From Macrostomum lignano (taxonomy: Eukaryota), in contig NIVC01002427.1 in assembly GCA_002269645.1 (NCBI GenBank), positions 62,001 to 126,000 of the forward strand: a DNA stretch of 64,000 nt, read 5' to 3'. The position numbers and the translations under genes are program-made. The notes under the pieces are model-generated. The model ran no database searches. It was not told the origin of the DNA and saw nothing but the letters and a program-made list of their open reading frames with translations. Below are positions 10,734 through 46,791 of this stretch, one piece after another; within the stretch, counting starts at the first letter, position 1, and each line of letters starts with the position of its first letter.

Positions 10734-13700
10734 ATGATAGGTAAGCAGTTAGAAGCGATTCGGGGGATTCCATCTATCTATCTATCTATCTATCTATCCA
10801 TCTATCTATCTATCTATCCATCTATCTATCTATCTATCTATCTAACAATGAATCTACATGTATCGATGTGTCAGATTTTCGACACGAAATAATGTATACA
10901 AAATTGCTTTCAGCCGCGCAGGTGACGCCCTGTCATAATCTGTTCGAATTCCGCTTCGTCTATCGACAAAGTATAAAATTTCCTTGGTCGACAAAGTTGT
11001 TGGGGATTCAACTTGTTAGAATTATATTTCCGTAATATTTTTGGATGTACCGTAAAATTTTTTAAACAAGCAAACAACAATAAGAAGTGCAAAAACTACA
11101 AAAACACAACTACTACTCTAAGCTCGTATTAAATACTACTACTACTACTACTACTACTACTACTACTACTACTACTACTACTACTACTACTACTACTACT
11201 ACTACTACTACTACTACTACTACTACTACTACTACTACTACTACTACTACTACTACTACTACTACTACTACTACTACTACTACTACTACTACTACTACTA
11301 CTACTACTACTACTACTACTACTACTACTACTACTACTACTACTACTACTACTACTACTACTACTACTACTACTACTACTACTACTACTACTACTACTAC
11401 TACTACTACTACTACTACTACTACTACTACTACTACTACTACTACTACTACTACTACTACTACTACTACTACTACTACTACTACTACTACTACTACTACT
11501 ACTACTCATTATAATTGCAGACGACGCAGAGTCGCACTCCCAGCAGGATCACAACGGCACCAACGAAGAATCCGGTCACCGTGTGAGCACACCCTGGCCC
11601 CAGTCGGCAGTGGAGCAGACCCCATCGGAAGTGAGCTCAAATCCCAGTCAAATCCATCGTCAGCAGCAGCGGAACCGGCAGCTGAGGCGGCCAAGCGACA
11701 CGGAGGAGAGCTGCGCCGACAGCGACAGCCTCAGGAACCTGACGCTACCGGAGTTCGCCGAGTTCGACATGCAGCAGCAGGGCGAAGAGAACGGCTCCGG
11801 GGACACCCATGGAGAGGCTGGGGCGGCTGCGGCTGCCGGCACTGCCGCAGACTTCGGCCCTAGCAACGAGTCAAACCGGCCGAAGCAGGCTAAGACGGTG
11901 TATTTCCACCGGGACGGCGTGACCTTCAAGCAGCCGATCAGGGTGGCCATCCACCCCAATCGCTATCGAGGCTTCGACGCCTTGCTGACGGAGCTGACGG
12001 ACCGAATGCCGGAGCTGAGCTACGGAGTTCGGGCCGTCTTCACGCCGCGAGGCCGCGATAGGCTCAGCTCGTTGGAGGATTTCGACAATCAGGGGCACTA
12101 CCTGTGCTCCACTAGGCAGAGACGGGCTGCCGCGCCTGTGGATCCCAATAAGTGAGAGACAGAAACGGACAGCAGACAGACAGACAGACAGACACTAAGA
12201 CAGACAGACAGACAGACAGACAGACACATAGACAGACAGACACACAGACAGACAGACAGACAGACAGACAGACAGACAGACAGACAGACAGACAGACAGA
12301 CAGACAGACAGACAGACAGACAGACAGACAGACAGACACACAGACACACAGACAGACAGACAGACACACAGACACACAGACAGACAGACACACAGACACA
12401 CAGACAGACAGACAGACAGACACACAGACAGACAGACAGACAGACACACAGACACACAGACAGACAGACACACAGACACAGACACACAGACACACAGACA
12501 CACAGACACACAGACAGACAGACACACAGACACAGACACACAGACACACAGACACACAGACAGACAGACACACAGACACAGATACACAGACACACAGACA
12601 CACAGACACACAGACACACAGACAGACAGACACACAGACACAGACACACAGACACACAGACACACAGACACACAGACACACAGACACACAGACACACAGA
12701 CACACAGACACACAGACAGAATCCCAATCCGATCCGCAGGCCAATTGTCACGCCGGCCTGGCGGGCCACCGGCAAGCTAACGGGCGGCGTTGCATCGGCA
12801 GCAGCAACCGACGCCTCCGCCGCGTCCCCACTGGCCCAGCCGATGCGATTTCGCGCCCGCCCACGCCGGGACGCGAACAGTTACCCGAACTCGGACACGG
12901 CCGCCGCGCCGGACGACCAGGGCGCCGCCGCCGCAGCCGCCTATGCTCCCGTGTTCAAGCGGGCCGACTGCAAGCGAATTTATGTTAGACAGAACGGCGA
13001 ACCATTCAAGAAGCACATTGTCCTGCTGAACAAGCGCATGGTTCAAAGTTTCGAACAGGTTTTAGACGATTTGTCCGCAATATTTCGAATGCAAGTTCGT
13101 AGAATCTACACGATTGAAGGTCAGCTGGTGAGTAAAACGGCCCTTTTTGGGGCAGATCTGAAACAGTTTTTAAACAACCAAGTCTAAGCTAAGCCACTCA
13201 TTTTGTTCTTCTATTTTTCCAAGAGCATTGGATCGATCATGGCTAAGTTGGTCCAGATTTCATCACAGAACTAGTTTTGTTTAAATTAATAAAACATTTT
13301 ATACTTTTTTAAATTTTTACTGCTTGTATCGATAATCGATAGTAGTTTTCTCGAAGTTTAAAGTTTTTATTATTCTATATTTTGCTCCTATAGCAGTTTT
13401 ATTGGTTTCTCTTGCAGTATTTCACGTTTCAAGCTTTAAACAAAAGCAAACATTGCACGGTGCATCACTCTGCCTTCGCTGCAGTGCTTTCACTTCTCGT
13501 TTGGTAAATGTACTTGAAAAGTCTTTGGTTTCATGCAGAGCTCTAGCTGTCAAAAAATTATTGGTTTAGTGTCAAGGGTGCCTGTGGAGTGTCAGGGAAG
13601 GTAGTGGAGTGTCAGGGGTGCCTGTGGAGTGTCAGGGAAGGCAGTGGAGTGTCAGGGGGGGGGCAGTGGAGTGTCAAGGGAGGCAGTGAAGTGTCAGGGG

Positions 13701-46700: not shown

Positions 46701-46791
46701 GCACCGCGGTCTAGACGAGGGCGACGAAGACAATCGGCTGACCATCGAGTTGTTTCCAGCAACCGCGGCTGCGACTTCAGGAGCTAAATAG
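10734..46791 (+). CDS. RP1: RP1/RP1L1-like doublecortin + multi-PLAT (LOXHD1-like) + beta-trefoil protein, 28 exons, about 2940 aa
   Basis: Hand-assembled GT-AG exons: 10734-10740, 11521-12151, 12740-13127, 15325-15532, 15979-16160, 17122-17347, 19133-19326, 20270-20427, 20761-20984, 22871-22974, 24578-24979, 26757-26934, 28457-28773, 30439-30831, 32059-32293, 33066-33101, 33183-33242, 33402-33464, 34588-34614, 37247-37503, 37989-38115, 38243-39438, 40078-40290, 41047-41460, 43318-43981, 44645-45172, 45277-46118, 46243-46791. They sum to 8823 nt and every junction keeps phase. DC1 (FDALLTEL...[11 protein letters not shown]...LED...YLCS) and DC2 (NGEP...[14 protein letters not shown]...AGQEKFKP) are RP1-type. 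The first exon and the micro-exons are the least certain parts. Confidence 0.88.
10772..10844. repeat. (TATC)n microsatellite, intron 1
   Basis: Read directly from the sequence. Confidence 0.95.
11134..11506. repeat. (TAC)x~124 microsatellite ending 14 nt before the acceptor at 11521
   Basis: Read directly; source of the poly-Thr and poly-Ser ORFs. Confidence 0.98.
12158..12719. repeat. (GACA)n/(CACAGA)n compound microsatellite filling intron 2
   Basis: Read directly from the sequence. Confidence 0.98.
13569..13981. repeat. About 20-bp G-rich minisatellite (GTGTCAGGGGAGGCAGTGGA)n
   Basis: Read directly; about 20 diverged copies in intron 3. Confidence 0.93.
14717..14880 (+). mobile_element. 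tRNA-derived SINE family A, copy 1
   Basis: A-box-like GGCCGTAGCCAATGG and B-box GGCTCGATTCC (14755-65). The body is nearly identical to 37544-37739. Confidence 0.75.
15650..15780 (-). mobile_element. Helitron-family remnant: 3' end (hairpin + CTAG) joined to a 5'-end motif
   Basis: The reverse strand reads CCCCAACGGGGGGCGCTGATTGCTAG|TCCTATATACTAAAA, matching both ends of element 60685-63548. The family motif AGCCTTGACATC lies near 15764. Confidence 0.7.
16240..17070. repeat. 10-bp satellite (CTAATCATTG)x~80, intron 5
   Basis: Read directly from the sequence. Confidence 0.98.
17715..17807 (-). mobile_element. 5'-truncated copy of SINE family B (3' part only)
   Basis: The reverse complement matches about 28312-28409 (TAAAATG..TGCCAGCATTAGCTGGGGTAATTGAG...GGACTGAAC.GCCGTACGCAGCCTTCAGATG). 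Confidence 0.8.
19460..20150. repeat. 41-bp pyrimidine-rich minisatellite (TTCATTTCCCTCCCTATATTCCTCATTTCCATCACTGGTGC)n, intron 7
   Basis: Read directly; shorter variants are interspersed. Confidence 0.95.
21041..22654. repeat. 63-bp minisatellite x~26, intron 9
   Basis: The unit translates as [21 protein letters not shown] (21 codons). Two main variants occur, GGGGATGGGT and GGGGAAGGAT. Confidence 0.98.
23645..24541. repeat. GC-rich 20/31-bp minisatellite (GCCCAGCAACTGAGGATCTGGGAGGCTGGTG)n, intron 10
   Basis: Read directly; ends about 36 nt before acceptor 24578. Confidence 0.97.
24995..26270. repeat. (CTAC)n-based microsatellite with higher-order variants, intron 11
   Basis: Read directly; begins about 15 nt after the donor at 24980. 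Confidence 0.97.
26951..27875. repeat. 21-bp minisatellite (TTTAGACACCTGTTTCCGTAC)x~44, intron 12
   Basis: Read directly; the antisense strand reads KQVSKVR. Confidence 0.97.
28179..28409 (+). mobile_element. tRNA-derived SINE family B with a CORE-like central domain
   Basis: A-box TAGCCCAGTG, B-box GGTTCGATTC (28230-39), then GTCCTTGAGCAAGACGCTTAAC...CTTCAGTTCACCCAGCTGTAAAATG, which resembles the MIR CORE consensus as I recall it. A second partial copy lies at 17715-17807. Confidence 0.8.
28774..29648. repeat. 18-bp satellite (GTATGAGTAGTGTGAGTA)x~48 starting at the 5' splice site of intron 13
   Basis: Read directly from the sequence. Confidence 0.98.
29759..30351. mobile_element. Possible MITE (hAT-like ends) carrying a 21-bp array
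   Basis: The left end CGGGGCGTCGATCACC and right end GGTGGCGACGCGGCTG are imperfect inverted repeats. A GGGGGACAAAGC motif occurs near both ends. An internal array (CACTCATTTTAGCGCCACAGG)n spans about 29866-30185. No TSD found. Confidence 0.45.
30866..31620. repeat. 12-bp satellite (GTGGTCATCTAA/GTGGTTATCTAA)x~60, intron 14
   Basis: Read directly from the sequence. Confidence 0.97.
35431..36187. mobile_element. MITE with about 190-bp TIRs and flanking TA (Tc1/mariner-type)
   Basis: TA|CCTTTTAGCGATCTAG...CTAGATCGCTAAAAGG|TA. The inverted similarity runs about 35431-35625 versus about 36005-36187. No coding capacity. Confidence 0.85.
36983..37125. repeat. 14-bp minisatellite (CTACCTCTCGGAAT)n
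   Basis: Read directly; lies just upstream of acceptor 37247. Confidence 0.92.
37544..37739 (+). mobile_element. tRNA-derived SINE family A, copy 2
   Basis: GGCCGTAGCCCACTGG...GGCTCGATTCC (37595-605). It shares body and 3' end (GTGTACATGCC.TAACGATAAATAA.GTTAGGG) with copy 1; a short 3'-part match also occurs near 31830-31862. Confidence 0.75.
40550..40940. repeat. 13-bp minisatellite (CTGGTATCTCAAC)n, intron 23
   Basis: Read directly; diverged copies. Confidence 0.92.
41489..43310. repeat. 24-bp satellite (CACACCTGTTAGACACTGAAGTCT)x~75 filling intron 24 up to the acceptor
   Basis: Read directly from the sequence. Confidence 0.98.
44050..44545. repeat. About 15-bp diverged minisatellite (GAGGAATCCCAGATT)n, intron 25
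   Basis: Read directly from the sequence. Confidence 0.9.

What the first reader, a model, noticed from the sequence alone, without database searches (positions are those of the whole stretch)
10734..46791. Full-length DCX2-PLAT2-trefoil2-PLAT(12-13) architecture: an RP1/LOXHD1-like hybrid of about 2940 aa
One phase-consistent reading frame joins RP1-type doublecortin domains (microtubule binding) to about 14-15 PLAT repeats (membrane/lipid or protein binding; LOXHD1 is built from 15). The classical vertebrate RP1 protein is instead DCX plus a long low-complexity tail; I recall PLAT-containing long RP1 isoforms being annotated but little studied. This may be the ancestral form, acting as an axoneme-to-membrane tether. 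The later PLAT repeats are strongly diverged and carry acidic inserts (e.g. 45420-45480).
Basis: partly seen in the sequence, partly recalled or inferred. Interest (0 to 1): 0.7.

Follow-up and report, generated by a model that had tools for sequence, protein, structure and literature searches.

The report
Flatworm giant RP1-type DCX–PLAT gene
The window holds an intact 27-exon flatworm gene for a roughly 2850-residue protein that joins two microtubule-binding doublecortin domains to two FGF-like trefoils and at least 14 PLAT domains; it is the counterpart of the little-studied long form of the vertebrate retinitis pigmentosa gene RP1, a family already present in automatic annotation.

Summary
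A GT-AG, phase-consistent model of 27 exons runs from ATG 11769 to the stop at 46789-46791. It encodes 2853 aa: DCX x2, PLAT x2, two FGF-like beta-trefoils, then 12 detectable PLAT domains. About 200 residues (aa 2384-2600), including the acidic insert at 45414-45480, are not recognisably PLAT.

The window is Macrostomum lignano or a near-identical genome: UniProt fragment A0A1I8GTT1 matches exons 12-23 at 94-100% per exon.

The protein aligns end to end with Bufo bufo "oxygen-regulated protein 1" (RP1, 2823 aa), and with full-length Physella and Branchiostoma proteins of the same architecture. LOXHD1 matches only repeat by repeat. It is therefore an ortholog of the long PLAT-bearing RP1 form, which occurs in spiralians and deuterostomes. 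This supports the "ancestral form" idea.

The axoneme-to-membrane tether function is inference only. Transcript continuity in this species is untested: existing M. lignano models break at the exon 11/12 boundary, and trans-splicing is common there.

No paper in the searchable library describes the DCX-PLAT form. Verdict: real gene, new member of a known, annotation-level family; moderate interest.

The parts
11769..12151 (+). Exon 1 (aa 1-127): start codon and DCX domain 1
   Evidence: Pfam DCX E 4e-16. 67% identical to M. lignano A0A1I8JCT0 in tblastn. Donor GTGAGA.
12740..13127 (+). Exon 2 (aa 128-257): linker and first part of DCX domain 2
   Evidence: Pfam DCX E 9e-14 on exons 2+3. AG/GT in phase.
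15325..15532 (+). Exon 3 (aa 258-326): end of DCX domain 2 and linker
   Evidence: The junction reproduces the homologue sequence ...[18 protein letters not shown].
15979..16160 (+). Exon 4 (aa 327-387): PLAT1, N-terminal half
   Evidence: Pfam PLAT E 5e-13 on exons 4+5. HMM i-E 6e-31.
17122..17347 (+). Exon 5 (aa 388-462): PLAT1, C-terminal half
19133..19326 (+). Exon 6 (aa 463-527): PLAT2, N-terminal half
   Evidence: Pfam PLAT E 4e-14. HMM i-E 2e-36.
20270..20427 (+). Exon 7 (aa 528-579): PLAT2, C-terminal half
20761..20984 (+). Exon 8 (aa 580-654): end of PLAT2, helix, start of trefoil 1
   Evidence: tblastn to mollusc and flatworm homologues. Profile match to FGF1/Symfoil.
22871..22974 (+). 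Exon 9 (aa 655-689): trefoil 1, middle
   Evidence: The junction restores the conserved ...CFLAIDNG... motif of the homologues.
24578..24979 (+). Exon 10 (aa 690-823): end of trefoil 1 and most of trefoil 2
   Evidence: 49-51% identical to homologues in tblastn. Pfam FGF E 2e-5.
26757..26934 (+). Exon 11 (aa 824-882): end of trefoil 2
   Evidence: The paralogue fragment P0018 ends at the equivalent of this exon's end.
28457..28773 (+). Exon 12 (aa 883-988): acidic/Ala-rich linker and PLAT3, N-terminal half
   Evidence: 98% identical to A0A1I8GTT1, which starts at this exon. The acceptor choice among several in-phase AGs is the least certain junction.
30439..30831 (+). Exon 13 (aa 989-1119): PLAT3 C-terminal half and PLAT4 N-terminal half
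   Evidence: HMM i-E 3e-6 and 3e-11. My frame keeps the PLAT motifs, whereas the database fragment shifts frame here.
32059..32293 (+). Exon 14 (aa 1120-1197): PLAT4, C-terminal half
32543..32611 (+). Exon 15 (aa 1198-1220): micro-exon, acidic helical linker
   Evidence: Reproduces A0A1I8GTT1 exactly, with AG/GT in phase.
33066..33101 (+). Exon 16 (aa 1221-1232): micro-exon, acidic linker
33183..33242 (+). Exon 17 (aa 1233-1252): micro-exon, acidic linker
33402..33464 (+). Exon 18 (aa 1253-1273): micro-exon, acidic linker
37247..37503 (+). Exon 19 (aa 1274-1359): PLAT5, main part
   Evidence: Pfam PLAT E 3e-5. HMM i-E 6e-18.
37989..38115 (+). Exon 20 (aa 1360-1401): PLAT5, end
38243..39438 (+). 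Exon 21 (aa 1402-1800): PLAT6, Gln-rich linker, PLAT7, most of PLAT8
   Evidence: Pfam PLAT E 6e-10. HMM i-E 5e-10, 4e-6, 1e-19.
40078..40290 (+). Exon 22 (aa 1801-1871): end of PLAT8 and start of PLAT9
   Evidence: 97% identical to A0A1I8GTT1.
41047..41460 (+). Exon 23 (aa 1872-2009): PLAT9 (diverged) and start of PLAT10
   Evidence: hhalign to the PLAT profile gives 94% probability, E 1.5e-7. A0A1I8GTT1 ends at this exon's end.
43318..43981 (+). Exon 24 (aa 2010-2230): rest of PLAT10 and most of PLAT11
   Evidence: HMM i-E 2e-4 and 2e-6. Colinear with paralogue PAA77003.1.
44645..45172 (+). Exon 25 (aa 2231-2406): end of PLAT11, then PLAT12
   Evidence: Pfam PLAT E 0.01. HMM i-E 5e-14.
45325..46118 (+). 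Exon 26 (aa 2407-2671): fast-evolving region with the acidic insert (45414-45480), not detectably PLAT, followed by most of PLAT13
   Evidence: hhalign gives <1% for aa 2384-2520 and 91-92% for PLAT13. There is no similarity to the paralogue in the first 147 aa. AF2 pLDDT 37, uninformative. The acceptor could be 45325 or 45277.
46243..46791 (+). Exon 27 (aa 2672-2853 plus stop): end of PLAT13, PLAT14, stop codon
   Evidence: Pfam PLAT E 6e-4. HMM i-E 7e-11. The stop is at 46789-46791.

Best explanation
This is one intact protein-coding gene of Macrostomum lignano, or a near-identical genome. It has 27 exons over 35 kb.

It is one of two old paralogues in that species. Both are orthologous to the long, PLAT-bearing form of the bilaterian RP1 (oxygen-regulated protein 1) gene.

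The protein has these parts, in order:
- two N-terminal doublecortin domains;
- a PLAT pair;
- a pair of FGF-like beta-trefoils;
- a position-conserved string of at least 12 more PLAT beta-sandwiches, whose last third has diverged strongly in this lineage.

Shown here: the gene structure, the domain content, orthology and colinearity.

Inferred from what the domain families do elsewhere: the DCX pair anchors the protein on microtubules, most likely axonemal ones as for retinal RP1. The long chain of PLAT domains reaches to membrane lipids or membrane-protein complexes, as LOXHD1 does for the TMC1 channel in hair cells. On that reading the protein would couple the ciliary cytoskeleton to the membrane. 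The ligand of the trefoil pair is unknown.
For: Gene model. All 26 introns are GT-AG and in phase, with no stop in 8562 nt.

Domains..

Species and part of the model. UniProt A0A1I8GTT1 (M. lignano) matches exons 12-23 at 94-100% per exon, including four micro-exons.

Orthology.
- One blastp HSP to Bufo bufo RP1 XP_040289065: q38-2385 / s33-2147, 734 bits.
- Two long colinear HSPs each to Branchiostoma and Physella full-length proteins.
- Sea-urchin LOXHD1 gives only HSPs of about 300 aa.
- PLAT units 1-3 and 7-12 find the same-numbered unit best or co-best in at least one of the three orthologues. Unit 4 finds it second best in all three. Units 5 and 6 are ambiguous. Unit 13 finds unit 15 in all three.
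- The same architecture was counted in Physella (3338 aa), Branchiostoma (3437 aa) and Bufo (2823 aa).

Constraint on the diverged tail. The paralogue PAA77003.1 is colinear with aa 1326-2720 at 33% identity.

Function of the parts elsewhere.
- RP1 binds and stabilises axonemal microtubules through its DCX domains (review PMC12203965).
- LOXHD1, made of 15 PLAT repeats, keeps TMC1 channels at the site of force transmission (PMC11387651; PMC8051682).
Against: - No transcript data were available, so continuity of the mRNA in this species is inferred from phase, splice sites and orthologues.
- Existing M. lignano protein models are fragments, and they break at the same place. P0018 (the paralogue) ends at the exon-11 equivalent, and A0A1I8GTT1 starts at exon 12.
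- No database protein covers exons 1-11 of this locus.
- Trans-splicing and polycistronic precursors are frequent in M. lignano (PMC5730564).
- Exons for the paralogue's N-terminal part were not found within 10 kb upstream of PAA77003.1.
- About 200 aa of the tail are neither PLAT-like nor conserved with the paralogue.
- Nothing here tests localisation, microtubule binding or membrane binding.
Confidence: 0.75

Rival explanations
1. The locus is transcribed as, or processed into, two or more separate mRNAs. One would encode a protein of about 880 aa (DCX2-PLAT2-trefoil2, exons 1-11). The other would encode a PLAT-only protein (exons 12-27). Possible routes are spliced-leader trans-splicing of a polycistronic precursor, an internal promoter, or intronic polyadenylation.
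For: - Both M. lignano paralogues are represented in databases by fragments that end or begin exactly at this boundary.
- Trans-splicing affects 39% of genes, and about 7% of transcriptional units are polycistronic, in this species (PMC5730564).
- Read-through past the exon 11 donor hits a stop after two codons (...EVIQCK*), so a short isoform would be translatable.
Against: - Exon 11 ends in phase 1 on a strong GTAAGT donor, and exon 12 has an in-phase acceptor.
- Exon 12 has no Met near its start.
- Orthologues in three phyla run through the same junction in one model, and the alignment to them is unbroken there.
- Introns 11 and 23, which bound the database fragment, carry arrays of 0.9 and 1.8 kb. 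I suggest that these broke the older assembly; that was not tested.
- There is no + strand AATAAA in intron 11.
Confidence: 0.15
2. The C-terminal third (roughly exons 23-27) is decaying. The diverged repeats and the acidic insert would be relics without function, and the working protein would be effectively the first 8-9 PLATs.
For: - HMM scores fall from 50-110 bits to below 15 bits for several late units.
- aa 2384-2600 is not recognisable as PLAT and is not conserved with the paralogue.
- The orthologues have 15-18 well-scoring PLATs after the trefoils, against 12 here.
Against: - The frame stays open through about 2.9 kb of CDS across exons 23-27, with canonical splice sites.
- The paralogue, which is only 33% identical, keeps the same order of units to aa 2720.
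- PLAT12 and PLAT14 still score 39 and 29 bits.
Confidence: 0.08
3. It is a LOXHD1 orthologue that merely lies next to an unrelated DCX gene, and the reader joined the two by eye.
For: Several database relatives are auto-named 'lipoxygenase homology domain-containing protein 1-like'. A sea-urchin LOXHD1 is the second-best hit for the C-terminal query.
Against: - Those 'LOXHD1-like' proteins (Physella, Branchiostoma) themselves start with two DCX domains and carry the trefoil pair.
- True LOXHD1 aligns only repeat by repeat, whereas RP1-long aligns end to end.
- PLAT1 and PLAT2 lie between the DCX pair and the trefoils within the same chain of in-phase exons.
Confidence: 0.02

Closest known systems
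Long PLAT-bearing RP1 / 'oxygen-regulated protein 1' models. Examples: Bufo bufo XP_040289065, 2823 aa; mammalian Gnomon isoforms of about 1390 aa. Their invertebrate counterparts are auto-named 'LOXHD1-like' (Physella acuta XP_059163011, Branchiostoma XP_066274370).
   Same: - Same order of parts: DCX x2, PLAT x2, double FGF-like trefoil, long PLAT array.
- End-to-end colinear alignment.
- PLAT units mostly match position for position.
   Different: - There are 12 detectable PLATs after the trefoils, against 15-18 in the orthologues.
- The last third is strongly diverged.
- It has an acidic insert and an acidic linker encoded by four micro-exons.
- There are two paralogues in this species, 33-39% identical to each other.
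Classical retinal RP1 and RP1L1 (photoreceptor axoneme MAPs)
   Same: A tandem DCX pair at the N-terminus. Database relatives of this protein carry the RP1 name. The microtubule-binding role of that pair is documented (PMC12203965).
   Different: The textbook protein continues into a long low-complexity tail and has no PLAT or trefoil domains (my own knowledge of the canonical isoform; not tested here). The 2025 review read here describes it only by its DCX domain and calls it retina-restricted.
LOXHD1 (15 PLAT repeats plus a coiled coil; deafness gene DFNB77)
   Same: A long array of PLAT domains with a short helical/acidic segment inside the array. It is a plausible analogue for how a PLAT chain couples a membrane complex to the cytoskeleton (PMC11387651, PMC8051682).
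   Different: LOXHD1 has no DCX domains and no trefoils. It shows only repeat-level similarity, with no colinearity.
Double beta-trefoil modules (fascin, amaranthin-type agglutinin, HA33-type bacterial haemagglutinin lectins) and FGF1/FGF2
   Same: The fold of the 300-aa insert between PLAT2 and PLAT3. Foldseek probability is 1.0 to these two-trefoil proteins. For FGF2, TM is 0.87 and rmsd 1.7 A for a single trefoil. Sequence-level profile hits go to FGF1/2.
   Different: Sequence identity is only 9-20%, and the relative orientation of the two trefoils differs (TM about 0.42). No ligand (actin, glycan, heparin) can be inferred. The structure was modelled on the snail homologue, not on the window's own protein.

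Membership tests
RP1-long (DCX-PLAT-trefoil-PLAT array) family | Two tandem N-terminal doublecortin domains | tested here: met
   Pfam DCX E 4e-16 and 9e-14. Own HMM places them at aa 42-113 and 206-273.
RP1-long (DCX-PLAT-trefoil-PLAT array) family | A PLAT pair directly after the DCX pair | tested here: met
   Pfam PLAT E 5e-13 and 4e-14. HMM scores 93 and 111 bits.
RP1-long (DCX-PLAT-trefoil-PLAT array) family | A segment of about 300 aa made of two FGF-like beta-trefoils between PLAT2 and PLAT3 | tested here: met
   - Pfam FGF E 2e-5 for the second trefoil.
- A profile of the segment hits FGF1/2 and Symfoil with the first trefoil.
- phmmer E 7e-81 to the same segment of the snail protein.
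- AF2 plus Foldseek on that homologue.
RP1-long (DCX-PLAT-trefoil-PLAT array) family | A long C-terminal PLAT array, colinear with orthologues | tested here: met
   12 units detected. A single HSP to Bufo RP1 over q38-2385. Positional best hits. The last 450 aa or so are colinear only with the M. lignano paralogue.
RP1-long (DCX-PLAT-trefoil-PLAT array) family | All parts on one mRNA | not testable with these tools
   No transcript data were available. This is inferred from in-phase GT-AG junctions and from continuous orthologue models.
LOXHD1 | Protein made only of PLAT repeats (up to 15) plus a coiled coil, with no DCX and no trefoil | tested here: not met
   DCX and trefoil domains are present. 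There is no colinear alignment to sea-urchin LOXHD1.
Classical retinal RP1 isoform | DCX pair followed by a long low-complexity tail that ends the protein | tested here: not met
   The DCX pair is followed within about 55 aa by PLAT1, and no long low-complexity tail is present. The definition of the classical isoform comes from my own knowledge.
Ciliary/axonemal microtubule-associated protein (functional class) | Localises to, and binds, axonemal microtubules | not testable with these tools
   This is an inference from RP1 (PMC12203965). No expression or localisation data were examined.

The most novel reading that the evidence does not exclude
The ancestral bilaterian RP1 was a protein of about 3000 aa with DCX, PLAT and trefoil domains, acting in cilia in general. 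The textbook 'retina-specific' RP1 would then be a derived, truncated isoform of that gene. The PLAT chain would work like LOXHD1, holding a membrane channel or receptor complex in register with the axoneme. If so, the long form would be an unrecognised ciliopathy or sensory-transduction component, and M. lignano offers two tractable paralogues for testing it.
Probability: 0.35. Interest if true: 0.65.

Novelty: new member of a known kind. Interest (0 to 1): 0.35.

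Why it matters
RP1 is a major retinitis pigmentosa gene. The 2025 review read here describes it simply as a retina-specific DCX microtubule-associated protein (PMC12203965).

The window shows that a flatworm keeps an intact gene for a much larger form of the same protein, carrying 14 or more PLAT domains and a trefoil pair. Database proteins show that this form is shared by molluscs, amphioxus and vertebrates; trefoil-bearing partial models from a hemichordate and an echinoderm point the same way.

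Ten full-text searches (8.3 million papers) found nothing on this form. It is therefore a conserved, unstudied protein, with an obvious hypothesis (cytoskeleton-to-membrane coupling in cilia) and a model organism in which transgenesis has been reported (PMC5730564).

The finding itself adds no new kind of system. It adds a full-length gene model where databases hold only fragments.

Tried and rejected
I modelled the 46%-identical snail homologue instead.
- AF2 on exon 26 alone, without an alignment, gave pLDDT 37. It says nothing about whether the region with the acidic insert is a PLAT.
- hhalign and phmmer also failed on that region.
- I looked for the paralogue's DCX/trefoil exons in the 10 kb upstream of PAA77003.1 and found none. 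Linkage in the paralogue stays open.
- I considered that a spliced leader ending in ATG (sequence recalled from memory, not checked here) could start translation at the exon 12 acceptor. By hand, that ATG would fall in the wrong frame (sequence at 28457).
It is followed directly by a microsatellite and no homologue extends there.
- Literature searches for DCX+PLAT, RP1+PLAT, LH2, Ensembl transcript ids and RP1 in motile cilia returned nothing relevant.
- Rfam found nothing in the window.
- AATAAA positions are uninformative for the 3' end.

Full report
WHAT IS THERE

The window is eukaryotic DNA, with short exons separated by introns full of micro- and minisatellites.

On the + strand, open frames between 11.7 and 46.8 kb contain recognisable domains. 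Pfam finds doublecortin twice (E 4e-16, 9e-14), PLAT twice (5e-13, 4e-14) and an FGF-type trefoil (2e-5) in the first eleven exons. It gives weaker PLAT hits in the later ORFs.

I enumerated every GT donor and AG acceptor compatible in phase between successive coding frames. I then chose junctions with the help of homologues.

- A near-identical database fragment then revealed four micro-exons at 32543-33464, which I placed exactly.
- The final model has 27 exons, from ATG 11769 to the stop at 46789-46791.
- It has 8562 nt of CDS and encodes 2853 aa. All 26 introns are GT-AG, and there is no internal stop.

DOMAIN COUNT

A PLAT HMM built from 260 PLAT units of the homologues finds 14 units in the protein.

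- 13 units have independent E < 1e-3.
- The marginal ninth unit is confirmed by hhalign: 94% probability, E 1.5e-7.
- The thirteenth unit is confirmed by hhalign at 91-92%.

Residues 2384-2600 are different. This region holds the acidic run [21 protein letters not shown], encoded at 45414-45480.

- It is not recognisable as PLAT (hhalign < 1%).
- Its first 147 residues within exon 26 are not conserved with the paralogue.
- A single-sequence AF2 model was useless (pLDDT 37).

The architecture is therefore DCX2-PLAT2-trefoil2-PLAT12, plus one uncertain stretch.

Both trefoils are supported.

- A profile of the 300-aa segment hits FGF1, FGF2 and FGF1-derived Symfoil proteins with its first half.
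- Pfam FGF covers the second half.
- An AF2 model of the 46%-identical Batillaria segment has pLDDT 89.4 and pTM 0.84.
- That model matches two-trefoil proteins such as fascin, amaranthin-type agglutinin and HA33-type haemagglutinin lectins at probability 1.0. It matches FGF2 at TM 0.87 and rmsd 1.7 A.

WHOSE GENE IT IS

An exhaustive HMMER search with the last 1178 residues found a 1090-aa protein that is 91% identical overall. It is UniProt A0A1I8GTT1 of Macrostomum lignano.

- Exon by exon, the identity is 94-100%.
- The fragment spans exactly my exons 12-23.
- The window is therefore M. lignano or a near-identical genome, probably another haplotype or duplicated copy. That genome is known to be redundant (PMC5730564).

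A second set of M. lignano proteins is only 33-39% identical but colinear with aa 28-881 and 1326-2720. These are A0A1I8JCT0 (named "Oxygen-regulated protein 1") and PAA77003.1 (1508 aa). So the species has two old paralogues, and the diverged tail is shared by both. No database protein covers exons 1-11 of the window's own copy.

WHAT FAMILY

The N-terminal 811 residues hit vertebrate RefSeq models named "oxygen-regulated protein 1" (RP1), with E down to 1e-214 and 95% coverage. Their precomputed Pfam lists include DCX, PLAT and FGF. Mollusc proteins are also hit.

Full-length proteins with the same order of parts exist in:

- Physella acuta: 3338 aa, 2+18 PLATs;
- Branchiostoma: 3437 aa, 2+17 PLATs (16-17 depending on the HMM threshold);
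- Bufo bufo: 2823 aa, 2+15 PLATs, named RP1.

Partial proteins with the trefoil segment come from Saccoglossus, Lytechinus, Ciona, lamprey, sharks, lungfish, caecilian and Lottia.

The alignments are colinear.

- Bufo RP1: one blastp HSP, q38-2385 / s33-2147, 26.6% identity over 2416 columns, 734 bits.
- Branchiostoma and Physella: two long HSPs each.
- Sea-urchin LOXHD1: only repeat-sized HSPs.

Unit by unit, PLATs 1-3 and 7-12 find the same-numbered unit as best or co-best hit in at least one orthologue. Unit 4 finds it as second-best hit, units 5 and 6 are ambiguous, and unit 13 finds unit 15 in all three.

This is orthology to RP1-long, not to LOXHD1. The array is ancient rather than a local expansion. 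I saw no ecdysozoan or non-bilaterian member, but I did not search for them specifically.

HOW IT PROBABLY WORKS

What is shown is the anatomy. The rest is inference from the families.

- RP1's DCX pair binds and stabilises photoreceptor axonemal microtubules (PMC12203965).
- PLAT domains are beta-sandwiches that bind membranes or partner proteins (established knowledge).
- LOXHD1 is made of up to 15 PLATs and a coiled coil. It is needed to keep TMC1 mechanotransduction channels at the site of force transmission (PMC11387651, PMC8051682).

The most likely reading is a microtubule-anchored, extended chain of beta-sandwich domains that links the axoneme to the membrane or to a membrane complex. 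I give about 0.75 to the gene-and-orthology part, and roughly 0.4 to the tether mechanism.

The partner of the trefoil pair is unknown. Fascin-like actin binding and lectin-like glycan binding are both only fold-level possibilities.

THE MAIN OPEN POINT

No transcript data were available. The M. lignano fragments in databases break at the exon 11/12 boundary in both paralogues. Trans-splicing and polycistronic precursors are common in this worm.

Against a split:

- exon 11 ends in phase 1 on GTAAGT, and exon 12 has an in-phase acceptor and no early Met;
- the orthologues are continuous and align without a break across this point;
- the introns that bound the database fragment carry tandem arrays of 0.9 and 1.8 kb, which I suggest broke the older assembly (not tested).

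I give the split-gene rival 0.15.

KNOWN OR NEW

The family is visible in RefSeq and UniProt under automatic names. Part of this very locus is in UniProt as a fragment. Ten full-text searches found no paper that treats a DCX-PLAT protein or a PLAT-bearing RP1 isoform. A 2025 review still calls RP1 retina-restricted.

I therefore class the finding as a new member of a known kind: a full-length model of a conserved but unstudied protein. It is of moderate interest, mainly as a pointer to the neglected long form of a human disease gene.

CORRECTIONS TO THE FINDING

- The start at 10734 is unsupported. The supported ATG is 11769, about 27 residues before the conserved N-terminal motif shared with the paralogue.
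- The length is 2853 aa, not about 2940.
- "Hybrid with LOXHD1" should be replaced by "orthologue of RP1-long".

Noticed in passing
window 12152-44644 (introns of the gene); also L001 10309-17434: Tandem arrays make up 45.6% of intron bases and 0% of exon bases. 14 of 26 introns are 53-98% covered. Each has a different repeat unit (period 4 to 63 nt), and the array often starts 3-30 nt after the donor. For example, intron 1 is 96% (AGACAGAC)n and intron 23 is 98% a 24-mer array. The paralogue locus shows the same pattern with unrelated units. Tandem repeats are reported as 15% of the M. lignano genome (PMC5730564), but I found no statement on their concentration inside introns.
   Followed up: partly
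window 11134-11506: A perfect (TAC)124 microsatellite (100% matches) lies about 260 nt upstream of the start codon, inside the likely 5' UTR or promoter region.
   Followed up: no
window 237-1910 (+): A 557-aa ORF with a reverse-transcriptase domain (Pfam RVT_1, E 6e-29), in a 64% G+C stretch. It is a retroelement copy upstream of the gene.
   Followed up: no
window 30519-30817: The UniProt fragment A0A1I8GTT1 follows three different frames of the window here and skips the conserved PLAT strands that my model keeps. Either the older assembly has indels or the other haplotype differs.
   Followed up: partly
L001 11276-11715 versus window 38243-39438: The paralogue's gene model has an intron, almost entirely a 20-mer tandem array, in the Gln-rich linker between PLAT6 and PLAT7. 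The window has one uninterrupted 1196-nt exon there. This could be an intron difference tied to a repeat expansion, or a gene-model artefact.
   Followed up: no
window 32543-33464: Four micro-exons (69, 36, 60 and 63 nt) encode a strongly acidic, probably helical linker between PLAT4 and PLAT5. LOXHD1 is also described as having one coiled coil within its PLAT array (PMC11387651).
   Followed up: partly
window 49800-51320: Long ORFs of 440-470 aa lie on both strands over the same stretch. They give dozens of spurious coiled-coil Pfam hits. This looks like another tandem array rather than a gene.
   Followed up: no
window 51537-52373 (+): An ORF with a weak PAN-domain hit (E 2e-4, just above the Pfam cut-off). 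It may be an exon of the next gene downstream.
   Followed up: no
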